Shown: positions 45,606-64,000, numbered from the stretch's first letter. The stretch: 64,000 bases of DNA from Leucoraja ocellata (GCA_036785375.1 JAWMAR010000276.1:1364001-1428000), one strand, 5' to 3'. The notes: generated by a model from the letters alone, not told the origin. Made by a program: numbers and translations.

Positions 45606-48408
45606 TTACGAACTTCTAAATGGTTGTACGGCAACCTTTCTACCCTTGCAAAGCGAATGAAAACTAGTATCCAACGTGCTTGCTGGACAATTTTTCCAGT
45701 TATTCGACTTGAAGAAGGGTCCTGACCAGAGTGTGGTATTTCCATTTTCTCCAGAGATGCTGTCTGAGCCGCGGAATTACTCCAGCACTTTGTGTCACAA
45801 CGTTTGCAGCCCCTTGTGTCTATAATGTATCTACTTGTGTTGTTACAGTTGGGGATCATTTCATATGCGCACTGAAGTCCGTCCGTCCCTCTGTACTTGC
45901 GGAGTTCTACATTTTACCGTGTATGACCTTCCCCGTCTCTCAAAATACATCCCCTAACATGGTGAATACAGATGAGAAATGGCCAAGTCCACGCTTATGG
46001 CTACACACTTGGCTCGATTGTGCTCCACGGAAACTGCCCGAACAGTGAACTGTCTCAACGAAACCGAGTTAAGAACTTAATGCACCATTGTCGGGGCAAG
46101 GTGCAGCGTGTGATCCGAGTGCCCGGAAAAAGGCTGCCTCGACCGTTGCAGAAATTGTCTATGAGACGCATTTTATGAAATGTGGCGAATCAGGACTTTT
46201 GAAACTCGTCAGAGAAAAACAAGTGGGCGTGTGGCATATTTGCCGTTGTGAGTGGTGATATTGCTGTTTGTTTCCTGGTTTCCTTTATTAACTTTGCACC
46301 GCGTCCCGCTGCGAAAACGCTGTAGAGATGACCGCGATTTTTCAATATGAGGGTTTTAGTGTCCTGACAACCCAAAAGGAGAGAGGACAAATGCAACCCG
46401 AATAATTAGTGAGTGTGTTTCGGTTGACGTGGCATGAAACTGATAGTTCGCTGCAAAGATCTATAAAATCTTTGGTTCGCTATTGGTTTCATATTCACGG
46501 CTCGAACATTCAAGGTTCAAGGGCGAGGAGGGTGAGCGGTGACGGATCAAAGGGGGGAGCGGGGCGAGGGGCAAGGGTTTGGGGAGGAAGAGTTGCGCGG
46601 GACGGGCGGCAATGGGCAGGGAGGGAAAGGGGACGGGACAGGGCAAGGGGAGGGGGAAGCGGGGACGGGGCATGCGGAGGGGGTGGTACAAGGGGAGAAG
46701 GACAGAGGGGAGGATGAGGAGCGAGTGAGGAAAGAGGGACGCGATGAAACTATATAGTAATATGCAACAGATTCCACAGACTGGTGTTTAGCGAGGCCGT
46801 GTTGTTTACCAGAACACTTTACAAACTGCGCGACCCGATGAGTTGCTCCGGAAGTTTGTGTATTTTGCTATGTAAAAACAGCATCTGCATTTCCTTGTGT
46901 CAATAACCGTGCTGCTGCCGTTGTTGGGTGATTGTGAAATGTGACCTCTAGGTCCCTTTGTTTCTCAGTATTCGTCCTCACAAAACGTATCAACTAATAT
47001 GGCGAATACAAATAAACATGTTTAATCCTCTCTTGCGACCTCGGGCTCCACACACGGTTGAGTCCTGCTCTTCCCCGCCACTTTCTATAGGCGGGGCAGC
47101 AAAATGTCTGACTGTAAACAAGTTGTTTTCTGTCCGGACACAATAAACTCTACCGCAATGAGAGCGAGTTAACGACTTAGTACAGTGTTCGGGGATTATA
47201 CAGCGTGTGTGACCCAATGATCCGCACTATGATCCGCCGACCACTGCAGACATTTGTATACGTCGCATTTTATAAAAAAGTTTGAGTGTTAGGCCGTTTG
47301 AAACTTGTCAGACAAGAAAAGCAAGAAAAGACAAGGAACTGCAGATGCCAGAGAAAGATACACATAGTTTGGAGTAACTCAGCGGGTCGTGCAGCATTTC
47401 TGGAGAACATGGATAAACGAATCTTAAGAAGGGTCCCGAAACAAAACGTCGACCATCTATGTTCTCCAGAGAAGCTGCCTGACCCCAGCCTTTTGTTCAT
47501 TTATAACACTAATAAACAGATGGAGTCGTTGAGGGTCTTTCGGCTTCGTTTCCGCACAGCCCCCTGCCGCGAATGACGGATGTGGTCGAACCGAAGACGG
47601 TACCTGGCTCCGGACAACCCAAAGGGAGAGGATAAATGCGATCCAAATACTTTGTGAGTTTGTGTTTGGATCATCTTGCTTTAACGCCGATAGTTCGCTG
47701 TTGGGTTCACCTTCGCATTCGCGCCCCGAACATTTCAAGTTCAAGGGCGAGGAGGGTAGGCGAGGGAGGGCGGAGGGGGGTAAAGCAAGAGAGGGACGTG
47801 GACGTGAGTGGGGGGGTGGGGGAAGGGAAGGAAAGGAGATGAGCGGTGGGGGAGGGAGAGGGAAACCGGGCCGGGGGGGGGGGGGTGGGGGTGAAATAAG
47901 GACTCAGGGAAGTGAAGAAGAGTCGCAATGAAATGAAACAATCTGGTCGACACAGCGATAGAGTTGCTGCCTCACAGCGCCAGAGACCCTAAAAATAAAA
48001 TAGAAGGCAAAGGATCCCACCGCGGACCAGCCTGGTGTACAGTGAGGTGTCACACAAAATGCTGGGGTTACTCAGCGGCACAGGTAGCATCTCTGGGGAG
48101 AAGGAATGGGTGACATTTGTGGTCGAGACACTTCTTCAGATTGAGAGTCAGGGGAGAGAGAGACTAGAGATATGTAGAGTAAAGTGTGAAATGCTAAATG
48201 CATTTCGTTGTCTCTGTACTGTACACTGACAATTACAATTTAATCTGAATCTGAAAGCAACTTCCTTGAGGCGTGTTGTTTACCAGAACCCATTTATATT
48301 TCTCGGAAATGTTACTCAATTGGTTAGAGGTGGAGCTAATGGGCTGGACCAATAAGATACCAACCACCTCCTTCCCCCTCCGCCCCCCCCCCCCCCCCCC
48401 CTCTGAGC

Positions 48409-49898
48409 CAAAGATCTTATAGCGGAGCAACATGGGTTACTCTCACGCAAACGTGTAGTACGCTCATGGGTGGATTCATGGGTGATTATGATTCATTTTA
48501 GCAACCAGCCCCCGCCATCTTGTTCTGCCCAAAGATTGGATCCGCAGCGGGGAGAGGGAGTGTGGGGTCCGGGGCAGCGGGGAGAGGGGCATAGGAGGGG
48601 GGGAGACATTGTAGTGTGGGGGCAGGCGAGGGAGTGCCGGGGGGGGGGGGGGGGGTAAGGCCTAGTGTGTGTGAAGTTGCAGGGAGGTTTACAATGTTTC
48701 TTATTTACAATATTTCTTATTTAATGTCCCTTGTCTAGTCTGAAATAAAGTTCATCATTGAATCAGAAGAAATATAATTATGTGTGTTATATGATATATA
48801 TTTATATGATTTTCATGTATGTATGTTTATAAACATTTTATTCTTTAACAAGAATTAACAGAATTATGAACTAACAGATTATGAATCTAACCCTTTCTCA
48901 CACACAAAAAGTCCCCCCCCTGTCAATTACCCTGCGAGTCGGGTCGGTTCCGGTTACTACAAAATCAACTCAAACACTGCTTGTGAGCCATTTAAAAAAT
49001 AAATGATTTAAAAAAAATTCAAAAAGACAATTACCAGAGTAAAATTTTATTCTTGACAAGAAGTTTGAACTGGCAGATTTATGAATCTAACCGACACAAA
49101 CTGTTGCCCCGCAACATTGATTACACTGCGAGTCGGGTCGGGTCAGGTAGGCTCAGGTTACTAAAATGGGCGGCGAAAAATGCCCAGGATCATCCTCCAT
49201 AGCGCACTACACGTCAGCCCATTGCATTTAGCAGGAGTAGCCTATCTTGCTCCGCTATAAGATCTTTGGCCGGGAGAGGGAGTGCGCGGCCCGGGGATAG
49301 GGAGTGTGGGGCCCGGGGATAAAGCCTAGTGTGTGTGAAGTTGCGGGGAGGTTTACAATGTTTCTTATTTAATGTCCCTTGTCTAGTCTGAAATAAAGTT
49401 CATCATTGGATCAGAAGAAATATAATTGTGTGTGTTATATGATTGTATACATTTATATCACATTCATGTAGGTGTGTTTATAAACATTTTATTATTTAAC
49501 AAGAATTAACAGAATTATGAATCTAACCCTATATCACGCACAAAAACTTCCCCTGCAATGCCAATTACCCTGCGAGTCGGGTCGGTTCAGGTTACAAGAA
49601 AATCAACTCAAACACTGCTTGTGAGCCATTTAAAAAGAAATGATTTAAAATATATTAAAAAAGACAATTACCAGTCAAATTTTATTCTTGACAAGAAGTA
49701 TGAACTGACAGAATGATGAATCTAACCCTATATCACACACACAAACTGTTAATTGATTACACTGCGAGTCGGGTCAGGTAGGCTCCGGTTACTAAAATGG
49801 GTGGGGAAAAATGCCCAGGATCCCCTCCGTAGCGTACTACATGTCAGCCCATTGTATTTAGCAGGAGTAGCCTATCTTACTCCGCTATAAGATCTTTG
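48409..49898. mobile_element. Non-autonomous DNA transposon (P-superfamily-like), internally duplicated
   Basis: TIR CAAAGATCTTATAGCGGAG, perfect 8-bp TSD CTCTGAGC (48401-48408, 49899-49906), extra right end finishing at 49268. Confidence 0.85.
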
Positions 49899-50289
49899 CT
49901 CTGAGCGGCAGTGAGCAAGTGACGGCTCTGTGTGCTTGTGTTTCAAGATCAAGTCGTTGAGACACAAGGAACTGCAGATACTGATTTACAAAAAAAGAGA
50001 AAGAGTGATCTTGCATTAATGATCTTGACACAAAGATAGATACTTGATTAGTACGGGTGTCAAGGGTTATGGGGAGAAGGCAGGAGATTGAGGTTCAGAG
50101 GGAGAGATAGATCAGCCATGGTGGAGTAGACTTAATAGGCAGATTGGCCTAATCACATGACCTTATGATGGAGTAATTTAGCAGATTGAGCGCATCTCTG
50201 GAGAACATGGGTTAATCTGAAGAAGGATCCCAACCTGAAATGTCACCAATGCTGCCTGACCCACTGAGTTACTCTAATACACCAGAATT

Positions 50290-51530
50290 ATAGTCATATG
50301 GTGTGCAAATGGGCCCAACCTGCCCATGTCCCAACATGTCCCATCTAGATTAGTCTAACTTGCCTGCGTTTGTTTGGCCCATATCCATCTAAACCTGTCC
50401 TATCCACATACCAGTCTAATTGCTCCTTAAACATTGCTATAATCCCTGCCTCTGCCATCTCCTCCAGCTGTTTGTTGCATACACCCAGCACCCCTTGCCT
50501 GAAAATGTTATCCCTCAGATTCCTATAAAATCTTTTCCCCTTCACCTTATAACTATGCCCTTTGATTTGCGATTTCCCCCACCCTGGGCTAGAAACTCTG
50601 TGTGTCCACCTGATGTATTCCTCTCATGATTTTATACACCTCTATAAGATCACACCTCGTCATCCTGCTCTCCAGGTAATTGAGTCCCTGACTGCTCAAT
50701 CTCTCCCAACAGCTCAGATTCTCGAGTCCTGGCCACATTCTTGTAAATCTTCTCTGCACCCTTCCCAACTAAACATATTTTCTATAACACGGTGCCCAGG
50801 ACTGAATGCAATCCTCTAAATGTGGTCTCACTGACATCTTGTATAATTGCAATATGATCTCCCAGGTTCTATACTCAATACTCTGACTGATGAAGGCCAA
50901 TTTTCCAAAAGCCTTTTTGACCACATTGATGCTACTTTCAAGGAATGATGTACCTGCACATAGATCCCTCTGCTCTACAGCAATTCACAGAGCCTGACCA
51001 TTCACCATGTAGGTCTTACCTGTATTAAACTTTCCAAAATACAACGACTGAATTTTTTTCTGTATTAAATTCCATCAACCATTTCAGCTCAACATCCTGC
51101 TGCAATTATTGACAACCATCTTCACTATCTGCAATACCACCCACTTTTGTATCATCTGCAAATTTGTTAATCTTGCCATGTACACAGTGGTAGACTGGCC
51201 AGGGTGTCAGCTTGCCCGATGGCAAGTGAGCCCCTGATGAAGTGGGCCCCCTATATCAAGTGGGCCCCCTTTGTCTCCTGACAACCAATATTTTTAGACC
51301 CAGTCCGCCACTGCATGTATATACTCATGCAAATCATTGAAATAGGTACCAAATAGTAATGGGTCCAGCACCGAACCCTGAGGCACACTATTAGTCACAG
51401 ACCTCCAGTCCAAGAAGCAGCCTTCCACCATCACCCTCTGCTCCTTCCAAGAAGCTAATTTTCTATCCATTCAATTATCTCTCCATGGATCCAATGTGAT
51501 TTAACCTTCCAGAGCAGCCTAACACGTGGT
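50290..51530 (-). mobile_element. CR1 LINE fragment
   Basis: degenerate RT (KFADDTKVGG on minus strand at ~51140-51170) and CR1 3' UTR. Confidence 0.8.
51185..51313. mobile_element. hAT-type MITE nested in CR1
   Basis: cagtggtagactgg...ccagtccgccactg TIRs; 8-bp TSD catgta(c/t)a. Confidence 0.8.
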
Positions 51531-51838
51531 ATTGGCTCATGGAAGTCATTGAGTATTGACATGCACTGAAGCACATGAGATCATCGGTCTTAGGATCACA
51601 ATCCACAGGCCAAGGGTCCAGTGTTAGCCCAGCCGTGTCAACAGCAGTGCCCTCTGACAATAAAGGTCAACCCTGTGACCCTGGAGGATGTGGACCATTT
51701 ATTATTTATTTGGAGCAGTCTTCTGATGAAATTTTGCATCAACTTGGTTTGTTATCCATAGCTCCCGAGACACTGTTCCTGAAGATTTGGAGAAGATGCT
51801 TAAAAAAATAACTTGTTCTAATTTTAATCTTCAAGGCA

Positions 51839-51893
51839 ATGGATTGTACGTTGAGAAAGATGCTGTTGTCATTGCTGCTGTTCCCTAGCTTGG
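51839..51893 (+). CDS. IgV-NLR signal peptide exon MDCTLRKMLLSLLLFPSL
   Basis: gcaATGg; G|gtgagt phase 1; acceptor-like cttcaag at 51835 suggests an upstream UTR exon. Confidence 0.8.
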
Positions 51894-54800
51894 GTGAGTG
51901 TTCATCTGAATGGGGAGATTGTGTACATTTGTCATCCACTCGCTGGCTGCTTCTCACAAGTTATGAATCTGATCTTAAAGGCAATTAAGTTTTCTGTTTT
52001 ATTCGTTGCCTAATTTAAGATTGAAGAGTAAACCCTTTGCTCAACAATATAACAAAGATGCTCACACAATTTTTCTTTCATTGCTTATTTGCCTATTGAG
52101 GTGACATTATTCTCCTGCTTTTACCTTCATTTCAATCCTTTTTCCCTTCATTTCATTTTGTAACTAAAGTAATATCTTGTAAAGTGTGATAGAGTCAGTC
52201 GATGTGGAAACATGTCAGTGGATTGGATTTGTGGCATGCTGGAAGCTTTAGCATACCACAGCCAGAGAGCAGTGCTGAACTACTATCTACCTCTTTGGTG
52301 ACTCTCAGACTTTCCTTGTTCGGACTTTGCTGGCTTTACCTTGCACTAAACATTATTCTCTTGTCCTGCACTGTAATACACTGTAAATAAACTGTACACT
52401 GTCTGGCTCAATTGTTATCATGTACTGTCTTTCTATTGACTGGATAGCACGTAACAAAAGTATTTCACTGTGCCTCGGTACACGTGACAATAAACTAAAC
52501 TGAACTCTGTTGGAGCACAGGAAGTTTGGAGGTAGATGACTCCAACTTTATCTGCAAGTTAACGCATGCATTTTCATTTCCTCTATTTTCCCAGCTGAAG
52601 GATCTTTCTCTCGATCCTATGGGATCTTGACTAGAGACATCCTGCTGCCCTGCGCCTTCCATGCTTCATCTAATTTCAATCTGAAAAATCTCATCATCAC
52701 ATGGCAGCGGACAGGCAGTCTCGCCGTGGTTTACAGTTTCTATTCTGGAACAATCCATCCGGAGCATCAGGACAAAGCATTCCTGGACCGCACTCAACTA
52801 TTTCTCTCCGAATTCACCAAAGGGAATGCGAGCCTGAAATTGGAAAGAATGTTGTTATCGGATGTGGGAAACTATACTTGTTTTGTAACTGTAGATGATG
52901 GAATGCCACACATTGAGAACGTGGTGGAACTAAAATTAAATGGTGAGTGCATCTTGTGACAGATAGATCAATGTTTTGTTGTGTAAATTTCATAGAATTG
53001 TAAAGCACAGAAAGGGAATCTTTTGGCTGTCTCATGCCAATGCTATTCTCTGCAAATCCCATTTGTCTGCATTAGACCAGTGTCTTTCCCATCCAAGTAC
53101 CTTTCCAAATGTCTTTCAAACATTGTCATAGTATCACTTTCTACTACTTCCTCTGGAAGCTCATCCCAGATATTGTCATCCTGTGTGTAAACATTCTCAT
53201 CAGATCTCTTTTAAAAGTCTCTCCTCTCACCTTGAACCTGGTTTTTGACTCGACCCGCAATCTTATCCGTCCATTTCCCTCCGTGGATGTCGAGTTTCTC
53301 CTGCATTTTTGTATTTTGATCAAGTTTCCAGCATCTGTCACAACTTGCATCCCCATTAAACCTGTGCCTTCTAGTTCTGGCTCCCTGCGGAAAAAGACTG
53401 ACTATATCCCATTGATATCCAATTTAAACTGGTAGAGGCAGAATCCCCGGTTGTCTGGCATTCCAGTGAGTGAAAAACCAGCCTTTCCATTTTCTCATTA
53501 TAATTACAGTCCACTATTCTGGGCGACATGTGCTGAATATCTTGTGAATGCTTTTACAATAACAATTCCTGTAACGTGACAACTGGAACTGCACTCAGTA
53601 TTCCAAATGCAGTGTAAGCAGTGTTTAGTACAGCTCCAACATGATGTTCCAACTCTTGCAGTCATTGCCCTGGCCTATGAAAGCAAAGAGACCATCTGAT
53701 TTGTGTTTTGCTATCTCTGGTGATAGGATTGGAAGTGCAAGTGAATAAGTGCCTCATCTAGGAAGTCTGTATCCCTGGACAGTGGGAAGGGAAGAGATGA
53801 AAAAGCAGGTTTTGCAACTTCTGCGATTGCATGAGAGAGTTTCCCAATCTTGGGAGCGATTGATAATACAGAAGACCGGACCAGGGCAATACATATAATG
53901 TAAAACAGTGCAGCACAGGAACAGGATATTCGGCCTGCAAGGTCCACGCCAAACATGATGTCAGGTTAAAATAACTGCCCTCTGCCTGCACTCAAACTTT
54001 CTTCAAAATGCTGAAAAGGGAGGAGAGGAAAGTAGTCTGAAGAAGGGTCTCGACCCGAAACGTCACCCATTCATTCTCTCCAGAGATGCTGCCTGTCCTG
54101 CTGAGTTACTCCAGCATTTTGTGTCTACCTTCGATTTAAACCAGCATCTGCAGTTCTTTCCTGCACAGAGGAAAATATATGTTTGGTGGTCAAGTCTTGT
54201 TGGAGCTGCTGGAATTGGCAAAGATGATCCATTGAACAGAGAGACAACTGGGTCCAGGGAACTCTGTTGTGTAGGAAGGAACTGCAGTTGCTGGTTTACA
54301 CCAATGATCGACACAAAAAGCTGGAGCAACTCAGTGGGTCGGGCAGCATCTCTGGAGAAAAGGAATAGGTGACGTTTCAGATCGAGACCTTTCTGTTCAG
54401 ACTGCAATATCAGTTTGTCGCTCGCCAATCCCTGAACTGACAACAGAGATCCAGAAAGAGAAGGGGAGTGTCAGATGCTGTAAATTGGAAGCAAAAATGG
54501 AAGGCATTTGAGTTGTGCCTGAGTGCAGGAAGCAGCACTGATATAATCGTCGATGTACTAGAAGATGAGTTGAGGGGTGTGCCAGAGTTGCCCCAAAACA
54601 GTGATAGCTTCCTATATCCCACAAAAAGACAGGCATAGCTTAGCCCATGTGAACTGCACTGTTGATCTGGAGACTATGGTCATGGTCCATTTGTGACAGG
54701 TTTGTATCGTGTGAGCACTTGTTGCTTATAAAAAATTGTATTCAAAATAGAAGACTTACACTACTATTACACTTGCAATAAAAAAAGGGTCCATCAGATT

Positions 54801-57800
54801 TTCACAATTCTGTTCCCAAATGCAAATTATAAAATTAATTACATTATAATATATCTTGATTTGAAAATGTGGTTTAGCTCAATTCTTAATTGAACACTAA
54901 CCATTTGTTTTTTTTTGTGTTCTGAACATCGTAGATATATCGGAGAATAATACATGCGGTGGCACCGATCCAGCTTCAGAAAGGAAAAAGGTTGTACTCA
55001 TACTTCCATTGCTACTTGTCATTTTAATTGCAGTTGGAATTTTGCATTGGCAAATGAAAAACAAGGAGAAACCAGATATTGAAGAGAGTGAGTAAAATGT
55101 TTAGGATTTTGGCCATTAATCACACAAACTGAATACCTATTCGAGAATGTGTTCAGAACACTGCATTGGGAATGGATTTCTAGGCACTTTCAGCCATAGT
55201 GTATATGACATCCTTTGAGAGGAACATGTTCTAACATGTGGTTTATTCTATTTCTTTTTAGTGATTCATTTACTGGAAGACAATATAAAAGGTAAAGAAC
55301 CAACCTCTGTTGAGATTTTCTTAAGTTATGCAGACTTACCTACGTGGAGCTGGCCGGCTTCGGGGCGTGGAGAGCGGCGGTGGCACGTTGATGCGACCCG
55401 GCTCCAGTGGATGGTAACACCGGGAGCTCGCGGATCCCCGGTGGGAGACTGCTTTGCGGGGCACCGGCAGCGGCGACTTCTCCAGCCCGAATTGCGGGGT
55501 TGAGAGTGACCTGGAGGGGGGCCCTACAACGCCCTGCGCGGCCTTAATTTGCCGCGGACTAGCGCCCGCCGGGGGCTTTGACCTCGACTTCGGGAGGGAA
55601 ATGGAGTGCAGGGGAGAGACAAGAACTTTGCCTTCCATCACAGTGAGGAGGAGAGCCACTGTGATGGATGTTTATGTGAATAGTGTTGATGTGTGTTTTG
55701 GTTCTTTTATTGTATTGTATGGCTGCAGAAACTACATTTTGTTTGAACCTCATGTGAGGTTCAAATGACAAATAAAGGTATTGTATATTGTATATAGTTT
55801 CTGCCCACAATAGTAGAAGTGGTCTCCTTGTCCACTACTGGAATCTGCCATGGAATTCAGCCTTATTTCACCCTTCAGAAGGGTGTGAAATAATTGTTTT
55901 TAGAATGTGGTCGTTGAATGAATAAAATAATTAAATATGAATTTTGAAAGAAAGAACATACAAAATATATATAAAATCCAGACCTGTTTGAGCAAAGTAT
56001 CTTAACAATAAATTAATTTTATTCTTTTCAGGAAGCCCATCCAGTCTCACAGCTCATTCAGCAGCTTGACCTTTTAAGCCACATCAGGCTAGAATGGCAG
56101 ATAACTGAAATTATTGATGCAGATGGAATTTGACGGCAGTCTTGTCACTTCCTCATCACCTTTACTGAGATTGTTTGAATCTTCAATTCCACAGCTGCTG
56201 TGGTGGGATTTAGGCTGATGTCACTTGATCAATGGTCCAAGCCTGTAGATGTTAATCACTATGCCAGCATACTCCACTGCTTGCCCTACTCCTCTCTGTA
56301 CAGCCTCATAGTGAACCTTGACACCATTGGTTCAATCAGTGTCCCTCACCCCTTGGTTTGGTGTAATCATATAGTGACCAAAGTAGAGTCCCACCAGTAT
56401 GTCCTGAATGGTACCGTAGTGTTGGGTGCAAGGATAGTCCCTTGTTTCTCACTCCGTTTTGCTGCCCTCCAAACCATGGATCCATTCTACAATGGAGTTG
56501 CATGCTGGAAGACCATAATCTAGCCATTGAGTATTATTTGGCAGGAGCATCATCATTCTGCATCATCCCCAAGCACCCAGGAATCCAAGGTTCACCTTCA
56601 AACTGTATCAGATTTTATTATGTGAAATATTTCCATAATATGGATATTTTGAACTGTGTAACAAAGTGCCAACCAAAAGCTGGTGTAGATGATGAATGGA
56701 AAATCTGCAAGATTTTAATACCTGTGTCAGCAGGGCATACTGACCAACAGTTGGCAAATGGAATAGTATAGGTGGTTACTTGATGATTGGCATGTACAAG
56801 GTGGGCTGAAGAGCTTAAACCTGAAGCGATGTGGGAATTCTTAAAGGGGATCAGCAACTTGATGGATATCTGATGCTCACAGTTCTCACATTTTGTTAAT
56901 CCATGATAATAAAATACTTGCTCGTTCTGAGAAATGTGTTTTTTTTCCTTCAGATGCCATTCTGAATTATAAAGAGTACATCTTGAAAGATAAAATGCAT
57001 TTATGTTGTTCATTAACACAACGGCGAATCGAAAACTATTCGGTTGCCAGAACCATCAATGTTACCAACTTGAAGGAACAAGACCCAGACGTTGATCTTA
57101 TCAGGAGCGATGACTCAAATATTGCACAAGAAGTACAAATTTCACAACTGCTGTCATTGCTTCGGAAAGAAAACTTCTCAAAGCGAGTCCTGCTGGTAGG
57201 TGATGCAGGAGTAGGGAAGAGTTGGACTGTTGTCAGCATGGAGCAAGAGTGGGCATCTCAACCAACCCACCCCTTGAGGTGCGTCTTTGTTCTCAGATTC
57301 CGTGACTTGAATGAGGTTAAAGGAAAGACATCTCTCCGGGATCTGCTGAAGAAGCATTGCACACCTTTGTCATCAGTCCTAACAGAACTCCTCTCGAACC
57401 CTCAAGATGTGTTGATCATTTTGGACGGGCTGGATGAATTCGCCCATCAGTTGCAATGGAATCCATCAGGCTGTGATTTCAACCTGGATAGTGAGGCTGA
57501 AGTAGGTGTTCTTGTTTCCAACCTAATATCCAAGAACCTCCTTCGAGAAGCCCAGGTGTTGGTTACCTCCCGGTGGAATACCAAGCAGATAGAATTTAAC
57601 AAGAAGTACTTTGATCAGCTTTTTGTTATCTCTGGCTTTACCAATGATCAGCTGAAAAGATATTGTGAGGTGTTTTGTGGAGAGAAGCAAAAGGCGGAAG
57701 AAATGTTTCAACGCATTACAGAGAATGCAACCATCAAATGTCTGGCTTCCAATCCCCTCAACAGCTTCATTCTGTGCAATATTTTGGACAAGTGTACCAG

Positions 57801-60800
57801 CTGTCAACGAGCGACTGCAAATGTACCAGTGACAAATAGCAAAGTGTTTACATTGTTGCTGTACAGTCTGTGTAACTGCAGCACGAGTAAAGAAACAGAC
57901 GCTGAGAATAAGAGTGAAGAGGAGAAGCAATTGTTTAAAGACACCATCCTGAAACTGGGAGAACTATCCTTCAACTCTCTGCTATCAGGGAAACTTAAAA
58001 TAAATGTGACTGATCTGAAGACCTATGGAATAGACCCAGACATCCTTTCAAAATATCTCTCAAATCTTGTGCTGGGCTGTAAATGCCAAGGAGTCTTTGA
58101 GTTCCACCATGCATTGCTGAAGGAACAATTTGCAGCTTTGTATTGTGCTACTTTACTCAACAATGAAGCTGAAGAGTTGGTCAAGTGTCTGGATCTGTGG
58201 TGCTTTGGGAAAAGGCCACTAAATCAAATGAGCCAATTTTATTTGCAATCTTTTCAACCTGACCACACAGAGAAACTGTACAATTTTCTGAGGTTTCTCA
58301 CTGGCTTCTTAACCGCAGGAAGAGATGGCAAGTTGTGGAACTATACAACTCCTCTCCCCCCTTCTACAGCCAGAGCTCTCACAACATGGTTCAAAAACAG
58401 CTTTCAGCGAGACATTAAGAAGGCAGAATTGCTGAATTTGATGCACTGTCTCTTTGAACTGAATGATGCCACTGTAACGGCAGAAGTATCTCCTTGCATC
58501 CGAGATGTGGATTTTCACAACGTTTCTCTGAGCCCACTCGATCTGCGTGCTTTGTGCTACTGTCTCAATCATTCCACCGTGGAGGAGATGGATTTGAGGC
58601 ACTGTAGCATTGGTGATAAAGGAATAAAGCAGCTCCAAGAAATACTAGTCAAGTGCAGAACTCTTCTGTGAGTAATGATTTTCAACAGAATATTAAGCTC
58701 CAGTTGCACTAATCTACCTTCTTGCATGCACAATGTTTGTCGACATGTTTTATATCTTTGTCACATTTTATGCCCTGCATGTCCTGATTTATTCTAGCCC
58801 AGCTAATATTTGTGCCTGAAAGTTGTAATGAAATATATACAAATGGAGATACTACTCTTCAAGACTAGAATGGAAACAATTTGTGCAATTATCTCCCTCA
58901 CCTACATTGTTCTATGGTAACCCCACCCTCCTCCAATGTTGCCCTGTGGAGCCACAGAGCTGCATTATAATAACCACAAGGGCAGGGATTTAATTATATG
59001 CATTCATTCTAGTTGTTGCTCTTATGAATACACTTGCATTGATCACTATAAAAAGACTTGGGGGCGGTTTGCTTTATCTGCAAATACACCTGTTGGGGGT
59101 TTGACCTTTCTGTAAATCTTGCCCCACCCCATTTCCAACGCAGCAGTGTCAATGGACAGGTATTCATAAATCTAGAGGAACAGCATCTCCTATCTCACCT
59201 GGGTGGTCTACAACCTAATGGCATCAAATTCATGTAACCCCTCTGTCTATTTGTTGTCTCATGATACACCTAGATTATCTGTATGTCACTGTATGTCATG
59301 TTGTTACTTGTGGGTGGAGCACCTAGGCTAATTCCTTGTATGTGAATACTTGGCCAATAAACTTACTAACTTACTTACTTGTCTCATATGCCCCTTCTTT
59401 TCAAACCCAACCCCTCTTTCAGTTTCTGTAATCACCCTACCCCATCCCAAATGATTCCATCTGTGTACACACCCACTTGATTTCCCAATTCCCTCCACTG
59501 TTCCCCTTTTGCCCACTATCCCACCCTAATGTGGTTCCACTCACCATTATCCTTTCTTATCAGATTCTATAATCTACCCATGTACCCATTATCACCTCCT
59601 CAGCTTCAGGTTCATCTCAGCATTCCTCATCTGGGCCCACCTATTACTTAAGGACACAAAGTGCTGGGGCAACTCAGCAGGTCAGGCAGCATCTTTGGAG
59701 AACACGGATCGCTGACATTTCAGTTCGGGACCCCACTACAGACTGATCATTAGTTTGAAGAAGAATCCTGACATGAAACATAATCTATTACGTTCTCCAG
59801 AGATGCTGCCTGACCTGCTGAGTTACTACAGCATTTTGTGTTCTTTTGTGTAAATCGGCATCTACAGTTCCTTGTTTCCTCTTTTACTGTACCACTCTAC
59901 TGCTTTTTTTTTAATTGCTGTTTTTTTCCCTTTTTCCTTCCGCCCACAATATCTAAAAGAATATGTGATTCTGTTCCATTCTGTTTGTAGTTTGTTTGTT
60001 TGTTTGTCTTTTTGCACAAAGTCCGCGAGCATTGCCACTTTTCATTTCACTGCACATCTCGTATGTGTATGTGACGATTAAACTTGACGACTTGACTTGA
60101 CTTTATGCTCTAAATCCTCGACCGCAAACATCGACTGTCTGTCTGCCGCCACTGATGCTGCTTAACCCGCTGAGTTCCTCCACCAGTTCATTTTTGCTCC
60201 AGATTCCTGCGTTTGCTGTCTCTTGTATATCCAAATATCCAAACATTGATTATTATCAACAAGGTTGAATTGATTTTGTGTATTAGAAAGTGCTCAAGCA
60301 GAAACAAAGGAGCTCTTAAACTATGTAATTACCTGAAGTCATTTTAAGCCCCATTTGCACTATCGTTCAAAAATCATTGCCCAGACACACGTGTTAGACT
60401 AAGGTTAGACTCTGCACTCCCAGCAGTGCCATAACTGTTTATTTTGCAGCTACCTTTGCAGGCAGCAGTTTGTGAGGATTGTGTTCTGTCCCCAGGCACT
60501 CAGGTCTCTAATTGTTTTCAACGTCTTGTGTTTCCAGGGTAAGCTCCAACAAACTGACTGTAGAGTCAGCAAAGAGTTTGAGTGCCGTCCTTGAAGACCC
60601 AAAGTGCAGGATTGAGACATTATCGTGAGATTTTTCATCACATAAATCCTCTTGTAAAATTCTCCAAGTTTCTATAGAGCTTCTAATCGCTGACATTTGC
60701 CATTTGGTTCCGTTTTCAGGTGTGGTACAAACTCTTTTGGTTCGGCGGGGGCTCAGATTCTGTGGAAAGCTCTGGCACAAAACAGAAGTCTCAAAATCCT

Positions 60801-62396
60801 TCGCCTGTATGACAATGGGATCACAGTTGAAGGCACAGAGAACATGACTCAGTACCTGACATGCAACAAAACTCTCCAGAAACTCTTGTAAGTAGCTGGT
60901 AGATGTGAGAACATAAGCAGTATATTTGATAAATGCTCACACGGATTGGTTTGTGTGCAATTATGTTGGCGTTGGTGAGTTTGAGATGTGTTATGTAAAT
61001 GTGAACATGTAGAAACAAGGTGCGGCAGATGCTAGTTTACCCGGGAAAGACACAAAAAGCTGGAGTTATGCAGCGGGTCGGGCAGCATTCCTGGAGAACA
61101 TGGAAAAGTAACGTTTTGGGACAAGACCCTTTGCTCAGACTGATTAGTCTGAAGAAGTGCCCCGACCTGCAGGTTTGATGAATCTGATTGATCAGTTTGA
61201 TCTGATTGATCAATTCAGACTGATTAAACTGAAGAAGGGTCCCGACTAGTAATATTATATATCCATGTTCTCCAGGGATGCTGACTGACCAGCTGAGTTA
61301 CTCCAACATTTTGTGTCTTTCCTTGTATAAATGTGGCTTTTTTTTTCTTTCCCAGTCTCCATAGGACCCTCTACCACACAAGGAACACTGCTGTTCCAGG
61401 CATGACCGTATGTTTTTGTTTCAGTGTGAAGGAGCGGCAGGAAAGGAGCAATGATGGAGAGAGCATTCTAACTCAAGACTGTGGCTGAATCACCATTAGC
61501 AATTGCACTAAGATTAGCTGGCAAAGATTACGCCTTTCGGAAGGAACTGGGCACATTCTTAATTGAGTAATAAATAAAAGAAACGAGTTGTGGGTTTGGA
61601 AATAGTTTAGATCAGTAAAAGGAAATTAGGATATAAGGGAACATGTTCAAATTTTCAAATAGGAATAATAATATTTGAAGAAGAAACATTTGCATGGATA
61701 AGAGAAAGAGTAGAAAGAGTGAGCAAGTACAAAGCTCCCTATATGTCTGCACAGTCAGGATGCTGAATGGCCACTTCCTCATTGTAGAATTTGATGATTA
61801 TTAAGACAACGTGAATGAGATGGTTGGAATTTATTTTTCTAATTCCTGATTTAAATACGATTGAAGCATTCACTAATTTTCATTGCCTTGTTGCTTTCAG
61901 TTTGTGTGCAAACAAACTTGATGACCTTGAACAGAAAAACATTCAACAAGTCGAAAAGCTGTGTCACGGGCTAAAGATCATCACTAAAATCAGAGACGAT
62001 GAAGAGCTCTTACTCCGAGTTGAAAGTCATGTTCAAATGCTTGCCTCCCTTGAGCAGAGTTACGGCACAGAGTGGCTGTGCAAACTATTGAAATCCATTC
62101 TGAAAGACCTGGGAGATGAGAGTACCATACCCGATGTGGACACACGGGTAAGGATAGGAAAGATAAAAGCAAATATTAACAAATATCTTCAGATGAACAA
62201 AGTCACCATAATTGATGTTCCAGACACGGAGAATGTGTTGCAGCTCCATACCCCTGCACCACTTCCTCGAAACAACTTCCTTAAACGTTTCTTTTCTACG
62301 TCACAGTGGTGCAGCGGTAGAGTTGCTGCCTTACAGCGAATGTATCGCCGGAGACCCGGGTTCTGTCTACACGGAGTTTGTACGTTCTCCCCGTGA
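51839..62396 (+). CDS. Predicted membrane-anchored NLR: signal peptide - B7-family IgV - TM - NACHT - LRR - C-terminal non-LRR domain, 1016 aa, 8 coding exons
   Basis: join 51839-51893, 52595-52942, 54935-55087, 55262-55291, 56954-58667, 60538-60624, 60720-60887, 61901-62396 = 3051 nt; all GT-AG, phases 1,1,1,1,2,2,2, uninterrupted frame. The 55291-56954 junction is inferred, not shown by a transcript. Confidence 0.75.
52595..52942 (+). CDS. B7/butyrophilin-family IgV exon (CD276/VTCN1/HHLA2-like)
   Basis: DILLPCAF...LIITWQR...VVYSFY...EHQDKAFLDRTQLFLSEFTKGNASLKL...SDVGNYTCFV; 348 nt, phase 1-1. Confidence 0.93.
54037..54064 (+). ncRNA. Minimal hammerhead ribozyme core in a Penelope-derived repeat (best + strand copy)
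   Basis: CUGAAGA-A-GGGUC-UC-GACCC-GAAA-CGUC; matches CUGANGA...GAAA...UH. Confidence 0.55.
54935..55087 (+). CDS. Stalk plus transmembrane exon
   Basis: ...RKKVVLILPLLLVILIAVGILHWQMKNKEK...; cgtag and gtgagt; 153 nt, phase 1-1. Confidence 0.85.
55262..55291 (+). CDS. 30-nt cytoplasmic mini-exon (MIHLLEDNIK)
   Basis: tttctttttag and G|gtaaag; phase 1-1, frame-preserving. Confidence 0.7.
55336..55795 (+). mobile_element. GC-rich non-autonomous non-LTR element (family of 6612-7443)
   Basis: gccgggggctttgac...ccttccatcacag...ggctgcagaaac...aaatgacaaataaa with (tattgta)n tail. Confidence 0.65.
56032..56069 (+). CDS. Candidate alternative terminal exon (GSPSSLTAHSAA*) giving a short IgV-TM isoform
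   Basis: strong acceptor ttttattcttttcag, phase 1, TGA at 56067-56069, AATAAA at 56908. Confidence 0.45.
56954..58667 (+). CDS. NACHT exon (NBD, HD1, winged helix, HD2, first LRR-like repeats)
   Basis: Walker A GDAGVGKS, Walker B LIILDGLDEF, sensor-1 VLVTSR, WH FEFHHALLKEQFAALY; acceptor ttttttttccttcag phase 1, donor CT|gtgagt phase 2. Confidence 0.95.
60538..60624 (+). CDS. LRR exon (one 29-aa RI-like repeat)
   Basis: VSSNKLTVESAKSLSAVLEDPKCRIETL; 87 nt, phase 2-2. Confidence 0.88.
60720..60887 (+). CDS. LRR exon (two 28-aa repeats)
   Basis: CGTNSFGSAGAQILWKALAQNRSLKILRLYDNGITVEG...NKTLQKL; 168 nt, phase 2-2. Confidence 0.9.
61901..62396 (+). CDS. Terminal exon: last LRR/cap plus non-LRR tail; last 31 aa SINE-derived
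   Basis: ttgctttcag, phase 2; FLCANKLDD... open to TGA 62396. Confidence 0.8.
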
Positions 62397-62480
62397 CCTG
62401 CATGGGTTTTCTCCGAGATTCGGTTTACTCCCACGGTCCAAAGATGTACAGGTTTCTATGTTAATTGGTTTAGTAAATGT
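62300..62480 (+). mobile_element. HE1-like V-SINE overlapping the end of the NLR reading frame
   Basis: cacagtggtgcagcggtagagttgctgcc...gagtttgtacgttctccccgtgacctgc as in other copies in the window. Confidence 0.8.
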
Positions 62481-62739
62481 TTTTTAAAAAATTAAAGCTT
62501 TTCGAAGGAAAAATTAAAATACTGGCAGAATTATTTCTGCTAGTATTTTTCAAATAAAGAGGTCCCATAAAGTGGGCAAATAACACAATATAAGATATTG
62601 GGTTGTCAGCACGCAATATCCAACATTTTCATATATTTTATATTTCATATATCCAACATCCACATATTTTCTTACGGTGGTTGTATTTCTTTCAATGCGT
62701 CTTTTCTTAATTTCCCAATTATTTGAGAGTTAATTATGT

Positions 62740-63778
62740 GGGTATGTTACAAAACCTACCTGAATCGTCATTGAGAATCTGCCCCAGGCCGTGTGCGCGA
62801 TTTTGGCGCTGTTTAGAGGGGGCGGGTTTAAAACGCGATTTTTACTAGGCTGTTCCAATCGAAGATGTTCAGCCTAGTAAATCATTAACGAAAAATCGCA
62901 GAAAGATCCCGTCGCAAAAGGTATTATTAGTTTTTATGGCCTTGTATAATAGTTATAGTAGTTTAAAAATCACTCTCTAAACCTGCGACCTCTCGCAGCC
63001 CCAGGGTTTTATAAAGTAAACAATTAAAGGTATGTACTTTATTTTTACACTAAAAGGGGCTTCTTATGAACCCTGTATATAAAGTTTTCTATAGCGAGTA
63101 GCTTATTTTGGGCTCTTTATATGCCGCAGTATTTTTCTGGGTATTTGAGGACACAAATCCAGCGCAATGTGAACGTTCTAAACCAGCGCGTTCACAGGAT
63201 CCCACTAGAAAGCCGATTTAAAATGGACTTTAATTTACAGCAATTGAACACTAAATTCCTTCCATTTGGCCTATAAATTGATGTAAATGAGATTTAAAAA
63301 TCATGTTTTGTTGTGAATTATTGGTGAATATTATTTGGACACTTAGGCTATTTAAAAATGTTAATCATTTATTAAGAAATGGATAGATGTTTAGATCTAG
63401 TAATTGAAGTTTGAAATTTGCTACACTTGGGTAACTAACTAATTATATGCTTTAATTTCAGGTCATCCAAGTTAGATTATTTTATGTTTGTTTCAGAATG
63501 GTTCAATCTACGATAACTGAAAATTTCATTCAGTTCTCTTAATTTTTAAGAAGGTTATGGCCTTTTGACAGCACGCGATCACAGCTTTTTTGTTATGTCC
63601 ATAGAAAATCAATAGGGAACAAGATGCTAATTTCCGAGTATGAAAATGGCCACAACTTTTTAAATACTTGAGATATGAAAGTGAATTAGGTGTCAAATTA
63701 AACTTCTTTTTATACTTTATCTGATGGGATAAATTACAGACTTGATTTTTTTAAATCTCAAAATGTTGTAACATTGCT
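62740..63778. mobile_element. Probable non-autonomous DNA transposon
   Basis: imperfect TIRs (ATGTTACAA ... TTGTAACAT); flanks taattatgt / aaattatgc resemble a decayed 9-bp TSD. Confidence 0.45.
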
Positions 63779-64000
63779 AAATTATGCAGGGCCAAGCTCA
63801 TCAGTGTCCAGTGACAGTAATTCCACGTAATGTTGCCTATCTCAGAGAGCCTTTGCAGTGACATCAGTGTGGCCTTCAGCACTTCTTCCAGTAGAAACAA
63901 GCTTCCAAACATGCCTTCACATTCACGTAGTCTACCTTAGAGCACTTCCCGGGTGAGAAAGTTTCCATTGCAACCAGGAAGTAAATGTTGACAGTCTACA

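What the first reader, a model, noticed from the sequence alone, without database searches (positions are those of the whole stretch)
51839..62396. Transmembrane NLR: B7-like IgV ectodomain joined in frame to an intact NACHT-LRR
Seen: signal peptide, B7-type IgV, TM and mini-exon all end in phase 1. The 1714-nt NACHT exon begins in phase 1 behind a strong acceptor 1.66 kb downstream, and I found no CARD/PYD exon or separate first exon in the gap. The 3051-nt join has no stop and keeps Walker A/B, sensor-1 and winged-helix motifs. Known: characterised vertebrate NLRs are intracellular, usually with N-terminal CARD/PYD/BIR-type domains; B7 proteins have short tails and butyrophilins carry B30.2. 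Inference: a cell-surface or endosomal receptor coupling an extracellular Ig interaction to a STAND ATPase switch. I do not recall this architecture being characterised, but I cannot search the literature.
Basis: partly seen in the sequence, partly recalled or inferred. Interest (0 to 1): 0.95.

Follow-up and report, generated by a model that had tools for sequence, protein, structure and literature searches.

The report
Membrane-anchored NLR with B7-like ectodomain
This skate gene really does splice a B7-H3-like immunoglobulin ectodomain and a membrane anchor onto a complete NACHT-LRR immune switch, and the same unusual protein is conserved from chimaeras to alligators but seems never to have been studied in a vertebrate.

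Summary
Confirmed. Spliced transcript contigs from three studies, plus raw oligo-dT RNA-seq reads, carry the four GT..AG joints, including 55291>56954.

The IgV is B7-H3/B7-H4-like. The large exon encodes a complete NACHT-WH-HD2 module.

Corrections:
- The start codon lies in an extra exon at 47636-47653.
- The gene also makes a 214-aa IgV-TM-only isoform through an alternative last exon at 56032-56069.

The architecture is not restricted to cartilaginous fishes. Full-length homologues occur in gar, lungfish, all three amphibian orders and alligator, and they form one clade with 100/100 support.

The 30-nt mini-exon supplies the leucines of a conserved juxtamembrane [DE]xxxL[LI] motif.

Eight literature searches found no vertebrate description. 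The nearest characterised thing is the sea-cucumber Ig-TM-NACHT receptor AjNLRC4.

Function is inferred, not shown: a type I membrane STAND receptor that traffics through endosomes.

The scan noted a similar gene 271 kb upstream in this genome (s1-884577).

The joined 3051-nt model was neither built nor searched.

The parts
47636..47653 (+). First coding exon (coding part only): ATG plus 5 codons (MRSKYF), with a GTGAGT donor at 47654. The 5' UTR extent is unknown.
   Evidence: Found by six-frame search and read. The 6 residues are exact in 11 stored proteins, including P0201 and P0024. The splice to 51836 is inferred from those proteins and was not seen in reads, because the laid stretch began at 51800.
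51836..51893 (+). Signal-peptide exon. The acceptor is caag|gca. Ends in phase 1.
   Evidence: Sequence read. The translation is exact in 11 stored proteins. The joint 51893>52595 is in 3 contig runs and 3 raw reads.
52595..52942 (+). IgV exon (348 nt, phase 1-1), B7-H3/B7-H4-like.
   Evidence: Pfam V-set E 3.8e-6. Best PDB sequence matches are CD276, 9e-30 for the 4Ig form and 1.8e-14 for the 2Ig form, and VTCN1, 5.7e-14. The joint 52942>54935 is.
54935..55087 (+). Stalk, single transmembrane helix and Lys-rich stop-transfer segment (153 nt). Its last full codon is the acidic residue of the dileucine motif.
   Evidence: Translation. A hydropathy peak at the homologous place is found in 18 of 19 aligned homologues. 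The joint 55087>55262 is.
55262..55291 (+). 30-nt mini-exon encoding (M)IHLLEDNIK. It carries the LL of a juxtamembrane [DE]xxxL[LI] motif.
   Evidence: Sequence read. E191, L195 and L196 are at least 90% conserved in 19 homologues. The joint 55291>56954 is. Gar isoform X2 (P0183) lacks the homologous 10 residues.
56032..56069 (+). Alternative last exon, coding part: G-SPSSLTAHSAA-stop. It gives a 214-aa IgV-TM isoform. Its 3' UTR probably runs to the AATAAA at 56908-56913, 40 nt before the NACHT acceptor.
   Evidence: P0201 and 4 cluster mates, from unnamed Logan contigs of 1135-1655 nt, end in exactly this peptide. Read depth over 56000-56800 is similar to exon depth in the oligo-dT run. The joint itself is not among the 15 listed; 64 further joints were not shown.
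56954..58667 (+). Large exon (1714 nt, phase 1 to phase 2): pre-NACHT linker, NACHT NBD, HD1, winged helix, HD2 and the first LRR.
   Evidence: Pfam NACHT 8.2e-27, NLRC4_HD2 2.1e-15, NOD2_WH 4e-4. Best PDB matches are NLRP3 3e-18, NLRP6 and NOD2. X1 contig record 2 lies on 56952-57790 with 0 mismatches.
60538..60624 (+). LRR exon (87 nt, phase 2-2).
   Evidence: Sequence read. 93-96% identical to contiguous residues of skate proteins P0024 and P0025. The joint was not covered by the laid stretch.
60720..60887 (+). LRR exon (168 nt, phase 2-2), two ribonuclease-inhibitor-type repeats.
   Evidence: Pfam LRR_6 E 0.014, below its cut-off. 96-98% identical to skate proteins. Repeat cores found by regex in P0001.
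61901..62396 (+). Last exon: final LRR, a conserved C-terminal helical-looking domain of about 70 aa with no known family, then a variant tail that reads into a SINE-like repeat.
   Evidence: Sequence read. No Pfam, NCBIfam or PDB match. The domain is conserved out to alligator by a sub-profile built here. All 164 residues are 94% identical to A. radiata P0024.

Best explanation
Shown.
This is one gene of about 14.8 kb (47636-62396, + strand) in a skate. It makes two mRNAs.
- The long mRNA encodes a 1023-aa protein in this order: signal peptide, one B7-H3/B7-H4-like IgV domain, short stalk, one TM helix, a Lys-rich stop-transfer segment, a juxtamembrane acidic-dileucine motif, a linker of about 75 aa, NACHT-HD1-WHD-HD2, about five ribonuclease-inhibitor-type LRRs, and a conserved C-terminal domain of about 70 aa with no known family.
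- The short mRNA uses an alternative last exon whose poly(A) signal lies 40 nt before the NACHT acceptor. It encodes the same ectodomain, TM helix and motif with a 12-residue tail.
The long architecture is an old jawed-vertebrate family. Its tree follows the species tree: cartilaginous fishes, then gar, lungfish and tetrapods.

Inferred.
- Signal peptide, single TM helix and positive-inside rule place the IgV outside the cell or in the endosome lumen, and the NACHT-LRR in the cytosol.
- The [DE]xxxL[LI] motif would engage clathrin adaptors, so the protein cycles between surface and endosomes or lysosomes.
- Because the LRR is short and the ectodomain is conserved, the IgV is the likely sensor of a conserved ligand.
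- Ligand-driven clustering would release the ADP-locked NACHT, which would oligomerise on the cytosolic face of the membrane.
- With no CARD, PYD or BIR, output would go through the conserved C-terminal domain or the pre-NACHT linker.
- The short isoform would act as a non-signalling competitor for the same ligand.
For: - Gene structure.
- RNA: four GT..AG joints, each in 3 of 3 contig runs (3 studies) and in 3, 1, 2 and 1 raw oligo-dT reads. X1 contig record 2 (2604 nt) links IgV, TM and NACHT exons with 0-2 mismatches per piece.
- Domains.
- Switch residues invariant in 19 homologues: Walker A G284/D285/G289/K290/S291, Walker B D359/G360/D362, sensor R408 and WHD H584.
- TM peak present in 18 of 19 homologues.
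- Cartilaginous-fish homologues: 14 of the 16 top hits list V-set with NACHT.
- Bony-vertebrate homologues: V-set plus NACHT by Pfam in 6 of 9 scanned. IgV, TM, NBD, LRR and C-terminal sub-profiles all hit in lungfish P0211 and alligator P0212.
- Tree: the clade of all these has 100/100 support, the cartilaginous subclade 100/100 and the bony-vertebrate subclade 96/86.
- Even conservation, skate versus chimaera: IgV 46%, NBD 60%, LRR 53%, C-terminal domain 44%.
- Motif: present within 40 aa after the TM helix in 39 of 59 family proteins, against a background of 0.094 per 40 aa.
- Short isoform.
- The adaptor-binding role of [DE]xxxL[LI] is recalled textbook knowledge and comes from no call.
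Against: - No functional or localisation datum exists for any vertebrate member.
- No effector domain was identified.
- The 59 proteins of the motif count include isoforms and close relatives, so 39 of 59 overstates independence.
- The motif is absent in lungfish, Pelobates, Mantella, second paralogues of Pleurodeles and Discoglossus, and Pristiophorus B.
- The first Ig cysteine is Ser in both A. radiata paralogues and in P0029.
- Of 18 listed coding differences between the window and transcript contigs, 11 are non-synonymous. Short-range constraint is therefore not obvious. That list was truncated by the tool.
- Three of the four runs are RNA only by guess. The recorded RNA run gives 1-3 reads per joint.
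- Exon joints downstream of 57790 rest on homologous proteins, not on reads.
Confidence: 0.55

Rival explanations
1. Inside-out ligand. The cytosolic NACHT-LRR senses an intracellular cue. Its oligomerisation then clusters or redistributes the B7-H3-like ectodomain. The cell thereby displays a co-signalling ligand to lymphocytes only when its interior is disturbed. The short isoform is the constitutive ligand.
For: - The ectodomain is most like the co-signalling ligands CD276 and VTCN1. Stand-alone models of it are auto-named VTCN1-like or CD276-like in whale shark and crocodilians.
- The NACHT-LRR is complete and constrained.
- A V-set receptor exon with a CD28/CTLA-4-like PPP...GNGT signature lies 23 kb upstream in the window. 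The resemblance is judged by eye.
- Alternative polyadenylation gives a ligand-only form.
Against: - No counter-receptor is known.
- About five LRRs make a small sensing surface.
- Nothing in the data shows the direction of signalling.
- Linkage to the V-set gene was seen in this window only, and synteny could not be tested (closed).
Confidence: 0.2
2. Phagocytic or endocytic pattern receptor of the AjNLRC4 type. The Ig domain binds microbes or glycans directly, and the cytosolic NACHT region drives uptake through the cytoskeleton rather than through a signalling platform.
For: - The only characterised Ig-TM-NACHT protein works this way (PMC8699970, abstract and section 29; PMC13133943, passages).
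- The conserved dileucine endocytic motif fits an internalising receptor.
Against: - AjNLRC4 has two Ig domains and two TM segments and lacks LRRs.
- Homology to it was not tested. Independent origin is likely, because the vertebrate NACHT groups with vertebrate NLRs.
- A B7-type IgV is a protein-protein interaction module in its known relatives. This point is recalled and comes from no call.
Confidence: 0.15
3. Membrane-tethered inhibitory or scaffolding NLR, in the manner of NLRC3 or NLRX1. The ectodomain serves mainly to place it on a compartment, and the NACHT-LRR sequesters signalling partners there.
For: - There is no death-fold effector domain.
- Automatic names are mostly 'NLRC3-like'.
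- The LRR is short.
Against: - The automatic names only reflect best BLAST hits.
- The IgV is as conserved as the NACHT over the chimaera-skate split, which argues for a specific ligand rather than a mere anchor.
Confidence: 0.07
4. Read-through chimera of two neighbouring genes, a B7-like gene and an NLR, with no functional fusion protein.
For: A stand-alone IgV-TM mRNA with its own stop and poly(A) signal exists.
Against: - The fusion joint is in every contig run examined, 3 of 3, at the same contig depth as the other joints.
- No alternative first exon or start for the NACHT exon was found.
- The same architecture, TM helix and junction region are conserved in sharks, rays, chimaera, gar, lungfish, amphibians and alligator, in a clade that follows the species tree.
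Confidence: 0.03

Closest known systems
AjNLRC4 of the sea cucumber Apostichopus japonicus (PMC8699970; also AjNLR-new, PMC13133943)
   Same: An extracellular Ig domain, a membrane span and an intracellular NACHT domain in one polypeptide. It is shown experimentally to be a membrane receptor that is internalised.
   Different: AjNLRC4 has an Ig-like and an Ig domain, two TM segments and no LRR, and it acts through actin/Arp2/3 in phagocytosis. The skate protein has one B7-type IgV, one TM helix, LRRs and an extra C-terminal domain. Sequence homology between the two was not tested here. The vertebrate NACHT is nearest to NLRP3, NLRP6 and NOD2, so convergence is likely.
Vertebrate NLRs of the NLRP/NOD group (NLRP3, NLRP6, NOD2)
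   Same: NACHT-HD1-WHD-HD2 followed by ribonuclease-inhibitor-type LRRs. Walker A, Walker B, sensor-1 and the WHD histidine are conserved. A large single NACHT exon is followed by short LRR exons.
   Different: No PYD, CARD or BIR. A signal peptide, IgV and TM helix stand in that position. There are only about five LRRs. There is an added conserved C-terminal domain. The protein is predicted to be an integral type I membrane protein rather than soluble or peripherally attached.
B7 family ligands CD276 (B7-H3) and VTCN1 (B7-H4)
   Same: IgV sequence (E 1.8e-14 and 5.7e-14 to single IgV domains). Leader, IgV and TM exons all in phase 1. Type I topology. The short isoform has a B7-like short tail.
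   Different: No membrane-proximal IgC domain. The long isoform has a cytoplasmic region of about 840 aa.
Butyrophilins (IgV-IgC-TM-B30.2)
   Same: A B7-related ectodomain is fused across the membrane to a large intracellular innate-immune sensor module. BTN3A IgV matches at E about 1e-5.
   Different: The intracellular module here is NACHT-LRR, not B30.2/SPRY. No B30.2 hit. No IgC.

Membership tests
NLR (NACHT-LRR STAND ATPases) | NACHT nucleotide-binding domain with Walker A and Walker B | tested here: met
   Pfam NACHT E 8.2e-27, 94.5 bits against a cut-off of 26.7. Both motifs found by regex in P0001. The residues are invariant in 19 homologues.
NLR (NACHT-LRR STAND ATPases) | Helical and winged-helix modules after the NBD, including the ADP-contacting histidine | tested here: met
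   NLRC4_HD2 E 2.1e-15, above its cut-off. NOD2_WH E 4e-4, 20.9 bits, just below its 23.1 cut-off. H584 is invariant. The role of that histidine is recalled.
NLR (NACHT-LRR STAND ATPases) | C-terminal leucine-rich repeats | tested here: met
   Four repeat cores by regex, plus one by eye, at P0001 residues 741-879. Pfam LRR_6 hits are at or below cut-off: 14-15.8 bits on single exons and 23.4 on P0001. The array is short.
NLR (NACHT-LRR STAND ATPases) | N-terminal CARD, PYD, BIR or acidic effector domain; cytosolic protein | tested here: not met
   No such Pfam hit in any exon or in P0001, P0010 or P0016. Signal peptide, V-set domain and TM helix occupy the N-terminus.
B7 family | B7-type IgV domain | tested here: met
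   CD276 E 9e-30 (4Ig form) and 1.8e-14 (2Ig form). VTCN1 5.7e-14. PD-L1 and BTN3A about 1e-5.
B7 family | Membrane-proximal IgC domain and a short cytoplasmic tail | tested here: not met
   Only one Ig hit in P0001 (V-set, residues 36-139). No Ig-like ORF between 52942 and 54935. RNA joins 52942 directly to 54935. A short tail exists only in the 214-aa isoform.
Butyrophilin / BTN-like | Intracellular B30.2 (PRY-SPRY) domain | tested here: not met
   No SPRY or PRY hit. The window ends 1.6 kb after the stop, and homologues end at the same place.
Echinoderm membrane NLR (AjNLRC4 type) | Ig ectodomain, TM segment and intracellular NACHT in one chain | tested here: met
   Architecture only. AjNLRC4 features are taken from PMC8699970 section 29.
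Echinoderm membrane NLR (AjNLRC4 type) | Common descent (sequence homology beyond the shared domains); two TM segments; no LRR | not tested
By the paper's description the TM number and LRR content differ.

The most novel reading that the evidence does not exclude
Jawed vertebrates ancestrally possessed a type I transmembrane NLR. It is retained from chimaeras to crocodilians and was not seen among the best 150 hits for mammals or birds. Its B7-H3-like ectodomain and cytosolic STAND switch form a two-way device.
- Ligand engagement outside triggers NACHT assembly inside.
- Conversely, NACHT assembly clusters a checkpoint-type ligand on the surface.
- A poly(A)-versus-splice choice 40 nt before the NACHT exon sets the ratio of signalling receptor to plain B7-like decoy.
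This would be a direct molecular bridge between the B7/CD28 co-signalling world and the NLR world.
Probability: 0.25. Interest if true: 0.9.

Novelty: new variant of a known kind. Interest (0 to 1): 0.8.

Why it matters
Vertebrate NLRs are taught as cytosolic sensors, grouped by an N-terminal CARD, PYD, BIR or acidic domain. Here a conserved, expressed family replaces that domain with a signal peptide, a B7-type IgV and a membrane span.

Three consequences follow.
- It gives vertebrates a receptor class that could pass information across a membrane into a STAND oligomerisation switch. Until now that was documented only in a sea cucumber.
- It ties a B7-H3-like domain, whose own receptor is still unknown (recalled), to a defined intracellular machine.
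- It offers an experimentally tractable system (gar, newt, frogs, skate embryos) for asking how NACHT activation can be driven by induced proximity at a membrane.

It also shows that automatic names such as 'NLRC3-like' and 'NLRP1 homolog' hide a distinct family. Gene models split into 'VTCN1-like' or 'CD276-like' fragments may have kept it out of published NLR censuses.

Tried and rejected
- ESM Atlas on the C-terminal part of P0001: the sequence is not held. I did not try a homologue.
- PDB sequence search with the last exon gave only chance-level hits, E 0.76 and above. Pfam at E up to 1 and NCBIfam gave nothing for it.
- dN/dS: no orthologous coding DNA was available. A crude count on the 18 listed coding differences between window and transcript contigs gave 7 synonymous and 11 non-synonymous. 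The list was truncated and mixes alleles and paralogues, so I draw no conclusion.
- I considered a FISNA domain before the NACHT, on a resemblance to NLRP3 recalled from memory. Pfam gave no FISNA hit, so it is not claimed.
- PF27087, listed in the precomputed column, is not in the local Pfam copy and could not be identified.
- Separate-genes reading: rejected (see rivals).
- Chondrichthyan-specific reading: one search suggested it, with scores dropping from 562 to 111 bits after Callorhinchus. The index-free profile search overturned it.
- Literature: eight searches and passages of PMC8455134, PMC4852459, PMC11258412, PMC5094078 and PMC2858798 showed no vertebrate V-set/Ig-TM-NACHT protein. 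The library lacks most subscription journals, and supplements were closed. The supplementary NLR tables of PMC8455134 and PMC11258412 might list these genes.
- The alternative-exon joint 55291>56032 is not among the 15 joints shown; 64 more were not shown. It rests on stored proteins only.

Full report
**What is in the sequence**

I read 51700-57100 and 58500-64000 directly.
- a 55-nt leader from the ATG at 51839 to a GTGAGT donor after 51893;
- a 348-nt exon, 52595-52942;
- a 153-nt exon, 54935-55087;
- a 30-nt exon, 55262-55291;
- a 1714-nt exon, 56954-58667, behind a T-rich tract and CAG;
- then 60538-60624, 60720-60887 and 61901-62396.

The phases are 1 up to the large exon and 2 after it. 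Each exon translates without a stop in its phase.

Everything was done exon by exon. Stored database proteins served as full-length stand-ins.

**Domains**

Pfam:
- V-set on the 348-nt exon, E 3.8e-6.
- On the large exon, NACHT (8.2e-27) and NLRC4_HD2 (2.1e-15) pass their cut-offs. NOD2_WH (4e-4) is just below its cut-off.
- Weak LRR_6 hits.
- No CARD, PYD, BIR or B30.2 anywhere.

The 153-nt exon encodes a stalk, a 19-residue hydrophobic segment and a Lys-rich stretch.

Against PDB sequences:
- The IgV is clearly of B7 type: CD276/B7-H3 at 9e-30 (4Ig) and 1.8e-14 (2Ig), VTCN1/B7-H4 at 5.7e-14, then MOG, PD-L1 and BTN3A.
- The NACHT exon is about equally close to NLRP3 (3e-18), NLRP6, NOD2, NLRP5 and NLRP1.

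Walker A, Walker B and sensor-1 were found by regex in the 96%-identical P0001.

**Is the fusion transcribed?**

Yes. I laid 51800-57790 (5991 letters) on three contig runs from three studies and on one recorded oligo-dT RNA-seq run of the same organism label.

Four joints appear: 51893>52595, 52942>54935, 55087>55262 and 55291>56954. All are GT..AG. Each is in one contig in each of the three contig runs, and in 3, 1, 2 and 1 raw reads respectively.

One contig (X1 record 2, 2604 nt) lies on the IgV, TM and NACHT exons, with 1, 2 and 0 mismatches on the three listed pieces. The window's own copy is therefore expressed as the fusion.

Caveats:
- The three contig runs are RNA only by guess, although intron-less GT..AG joins in 25-45 Mb contig sets can hardly be anything else.
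- Raw-read support is thin.
- The stretch ended at 57790. The three downstream joints rest on contiguous matches to skate proteins.

**Two corrections to the model**

1. All skate proteins start seven residues earlier. A six-frame search found six of those residues as a small exon at 47636-47653 with a GTGAGT donor. The seventh is the first codon behind an acceptor at 51835|51836. The product is then 1023 aa, the length of Amblyraja radiata XP_032895919 (P0024).

2. The last about 45 residues differ from most orthologues and run into a SINE-like repeat. P0024 shares this tail at 94% over all 164 residues of the exon. It is therefore an old variant of this paralogue, not an assembly slip.

**A second product**

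The index-free profile search returned a 214-aa protein cluster from unnamed Logan contigs of 1135-1655 nt.

P0201 contains, exactly, the window's translations of the start exon, leader, IgV, TM exon and mini-exon. These are followed by the 11 residues encoded at 56034-56066.

The alternative last exon noted earlier by the scan (s1-885594) is therefore real. Its AATAAA at 56908-56913 lies 40 nt before the NACHT acceptor.

In the oligo-dT run, depth over 56000-56800 is of the same order as exon depth. That fits a 3' UTR.

Both forms exist.

**Distribution**

A word-indexed search with the NACHT ORF found 16 cartilaginous-fish proteins of 810-1024 aa (skates, rays, sawfish, sharks, Callorhinchus). 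Of these, 14 list V-set together with NACHT. The next hits scored far lower.

This looked chondrichthyan-specific. A HMMER profile of 19 of these proteins, run against 1.84 billion representatives, showed otherwise.

Single-stretch, end-to-end matches turned out to be:
- spotted gar and alligator gar;
- West African lungfish;
- Pleurodeles;
- the caecilian Rhinatrema;
- many frogs (Discoglossus, Hyperolius, Pelobates, Pelodytes, Mantella, Ranitomeya, Pyxicephalus, Engystomops);
- both Alligator species.

Pfam confirms V-set plus NACHT in 6 of 9 scanned. The other three are a Spea protein with CARD plus NACHT and two Alosa proteins.

Sub-profiles built from the cartilaginous-fish alignment hit IgV, NBD, HD, LRR and the C-terminal domain, in order, in lungfish P0211 and alligator P0212. 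Each also has a hydropathy peak between IgV and NBD.

**Tree**

I built a maximum-likelihood tree of the NBD-to-HD2 region: 53 rows, careful search, LG+C20+F+G4.
- It puts every one of these proteins in one clade (UFBoot/SH-aLRT 100/100), apart from the CARD, PYD and B30.2 NLRs.
- Inside it, cartilaginous fishes (100/100) are sister to bony vertebrates (96/86). There gar branches first, then lungfish, then tetrapods.
- Rows without an IgV inside the clade are either shorter isoforms of the same genes or fragments that begin at the NBD.

The simplest reading is one fusion event before the split of cartilaginous and bony vertebrates.

I cannot say from these data where it was lost. Mammals, birds, squamates, turtles and most teleosts are simply not among the 150 best representatives.

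**Conservation and the mini-exon**

In the 19-protein alignment these are invariant: the Ig core (Trp, the DxGxYxC segment), Walker A, Walker B, the sensor arginine, the winged-helix histidine and many LRR positions.

Skate-chimaera identity is similar across modules:

| Module | Identity |
|---|---|
| IgV | 46% |
| NBD | 60% |
| HD1-WHD-HD2 | 48% |
| LRR | 53% |
| C-terminal domain | 44% |

The stalk/TM region (12%) and the linker (24%) are free to drift.

Within that drifting juxtamembrane region one short motif stands out, [DE]xxxL[LI], 10-25 residues after the TM helix. Its acidic residue is the last full codon of the TM exon. Its leucines are in the 30-nt mini-exon.

It occurs in 39 of 59 TM-bearing family proteins, against a background density of 0.094 per 40 residues in the rest of the same proteins.
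- Present in every main-line cartilaginous-fish sequence and in gar, Pleurodeles 1, Discoglossus 1, Hyperolius, Ranitomeya, Pyxicephalus, Engystomops, Rhinatrema and alligator.
- Lacking in lungfish, Pelobates, Mantella, the second paralogues of Pleurodeles and Discoglossus, and Pristiophorus B.
- The 59 include isoforms and near-identical sequences, so the count is not a set of independent trials.
- Gar isoform X2 skips exactly these ten residues.

That such a motif is the classical adaptor-binding endocytic/lysosomal sorting signal is recalled knowledge, not a tool result.

**How it most likely works**

Shown:
- one polypeptide with a cleavable-looking leader, one IgV, one TM helix, basic residues after it, and a complete NACHT-LRR;
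- a truncated isoform with the same ectodomain.

Inferred:
- Type I topology: IgV outside or in the endosome lumen, NACHT-LRR in the cytosol.
- Adaptor-dependent cycling between surface and endosomes.
- The conserved IgV is the ligand-binding part, because the LRR array has only about five repeats.
- Ligand-induced proximity drives NACHT oligomerisation at the membrane.
- Output goes through the conserved C-terminal domain of about 70 aa or the pre-NACHT linker, since no death-fold domain is present.
- The short isoform is a competitor.

I put about 0.95 on the gene structure and on conservation. I put about 0.4 on this particular direction of signalling.

The rivals are:
- an inside-out device that displays a B7-like ligand under NACHT control;
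- an AjNLRC4-like uptake receptor;
- a tethered inhibitory NLR;
- a meaningless read-through chimera, which is very unlikely.

**Comparison with what is known**

- NLR: it passes the NACHT, helical-module and LRR tests. It fails the N-terminal effector and cytosolic tests.
- B7 family: it has a B7-type IgV. It fails B7 membership on the missing IgC and, in the long form, on the tail.
- Butyrophilin: it fails for lack of B30.2.
- Sea-cucumber AjNLRC4: this is the only characterised protein with the same logic. It is a membrane receptor with extracellular Ig domains and an intracellular NACHT, and it mediates Vibrio uptake (PMC8699970, abstract and section 29; PMC13133943, passages). It has two TM segments and no LRR. 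Homology to it was not tested.
- Membrane-bound NLRs are also mentioned as predictions in sea anemones (PMC5094078, one passage).

**Is it in print for vertebrates?**

Eight full-text searches gave no paper describing a vertebrate NLR with an Ig or V-set ectodomain or a TM segment.
- The whale-shark NLR census says nothing of it in the passages holding 'V-set', 'transmembrane' or 'NACHT' (PMC8455134).
- The zebrafish NLR paper does not either (PMC4852459).
- Nor does the cross-vertebrate inflammasome survey that includes alligator, caecilian, lungfish and gar (PMC11258412).

In whale shark and crocodilians the ectodomain exists as separate short models named 'VTCN1-like' or 'CD276 antigen-like'. 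That may be why censuses missed it.

The library omits most subscription journals, and supplements were closed. 'Not described' is therefore limited to these searches.

**Other copies**

The scan's notes hold a similar reading 271 kb upstream in the same genome (s1-884577). I could not inspect it.

The X5 contigs carry a variant of the IgV exon with the substitutions seen in P0001. That would fit a second expressed copy or allele.

A. radiata has two annotated genes of this kind on different records.

**Verdict**

The structural interpretation is right. The function remains inference.

I rate it a new variant of a known kind: an NLR with a new, membrane-spanning N-terminal module, with an invertebrate analogue. 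It has high interest because it is old, conserved, expressed, unnamed and directly testable.

The look-up of encoding contigs and structure prediction, and hence fold search, were closed. The Atlas could not read the query.

Noticed in passing
window 27130-39146 (V exon ORF 28606-29022, + strand): A V-set exon (Pfam 1.4e-8) ends in a ...PPP...G-x-G-N-G-T...V stretch that, by eye, resembles the CD28/CTLA-4 ligand-binding loop and J-like strand. It lies 23 kb upstream of the B7-like NLR on the same strand. The scan has a separate note on it (s1-884893). It could be a counter-receptor candidate. Conservation of the linkage was not tested.
   Followed up: partly
window 1815-5931, - strand: Exon-sized ORFs of an acyl-CoA thioesterase/BAAT-like gene. 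Pfam Bile_Hydr_Trans gives E 3.1e-6 on 5557-5931. The ORF at 1815-2189 looks like the esterase part by eye, but Pfam gave no hit.
   Followed up: partly
window 54000-54400; similar stretches near 47380-47480, 59640-59840, 61030-61320: A short interspersed repeat in the intron between the IgV and TM exons collects enormous summed contig depth (up to about 39,000) and hundreds of loose ends and strand-switch joints in all four runs. It is a highly expressed, genome-wide SINE-like element and not part of the gene's mRNA.
   Followed up: no
window 62280-62396: Relative to most orthologues, the reading frame of the last few codons is shifted, and the ORF runs about 40 codons further into a tRNA-like/SINE-like sequence. 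A. radiata P0024 has the same tail at 94% identity. The 982-986-aa skate proteins end a few residues after the point of divergence.
   Followed up: partly
alignment A1, column of the first Ig cysteine (P0001 residue about 45): The canonical B-strand cysteine is Ser in both Amblyraja radiata genes (P0022, P0024) and in Pristiophorus P0029. The F-strand cysteine is invariant. So the intradomain disulfide is dispensable in some lineages.
   Followed up: no
P0183/P0184 (Lepisosteus isoform X2) against P0033 (X1): The gar isoform differs by exactly the ten residues that hold the dileucine motif. This suggests the mini-exon is alternatively spliced and the sorting signal is optional.
   Followed up: no
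P0113 (Narcine bancroftii, 1168 aa) and P0041 (707 aa): P0113 is an NLR outside the family clade that also has a weak IgV hit and a hydrophobic peak. It is either an independent Ig-NLR combination or a chimeric model. P0041 runs NACHT-LRR-Cterm-IgV-TM, as expected from read-through between tandem copies.
   Followed up: no
window 7756-8313, + strand: A 185-aa ORF that by eye looks like the C-terminal DDE part of a Tc1/mariner transposase. Pfam gave no hit at E up to 0.01.
   Followed up: partly
window 54953 region (stalk, codon for Cys in ISENNTCGG): The window and P0200/P0201 have an unpaired stalk cysteine where P0001, P0129, P0198 and P0199 have Ser. This is a polymorphic or paralogue-specific site that could allow disulfide-linked dimers.
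   Followed up: no
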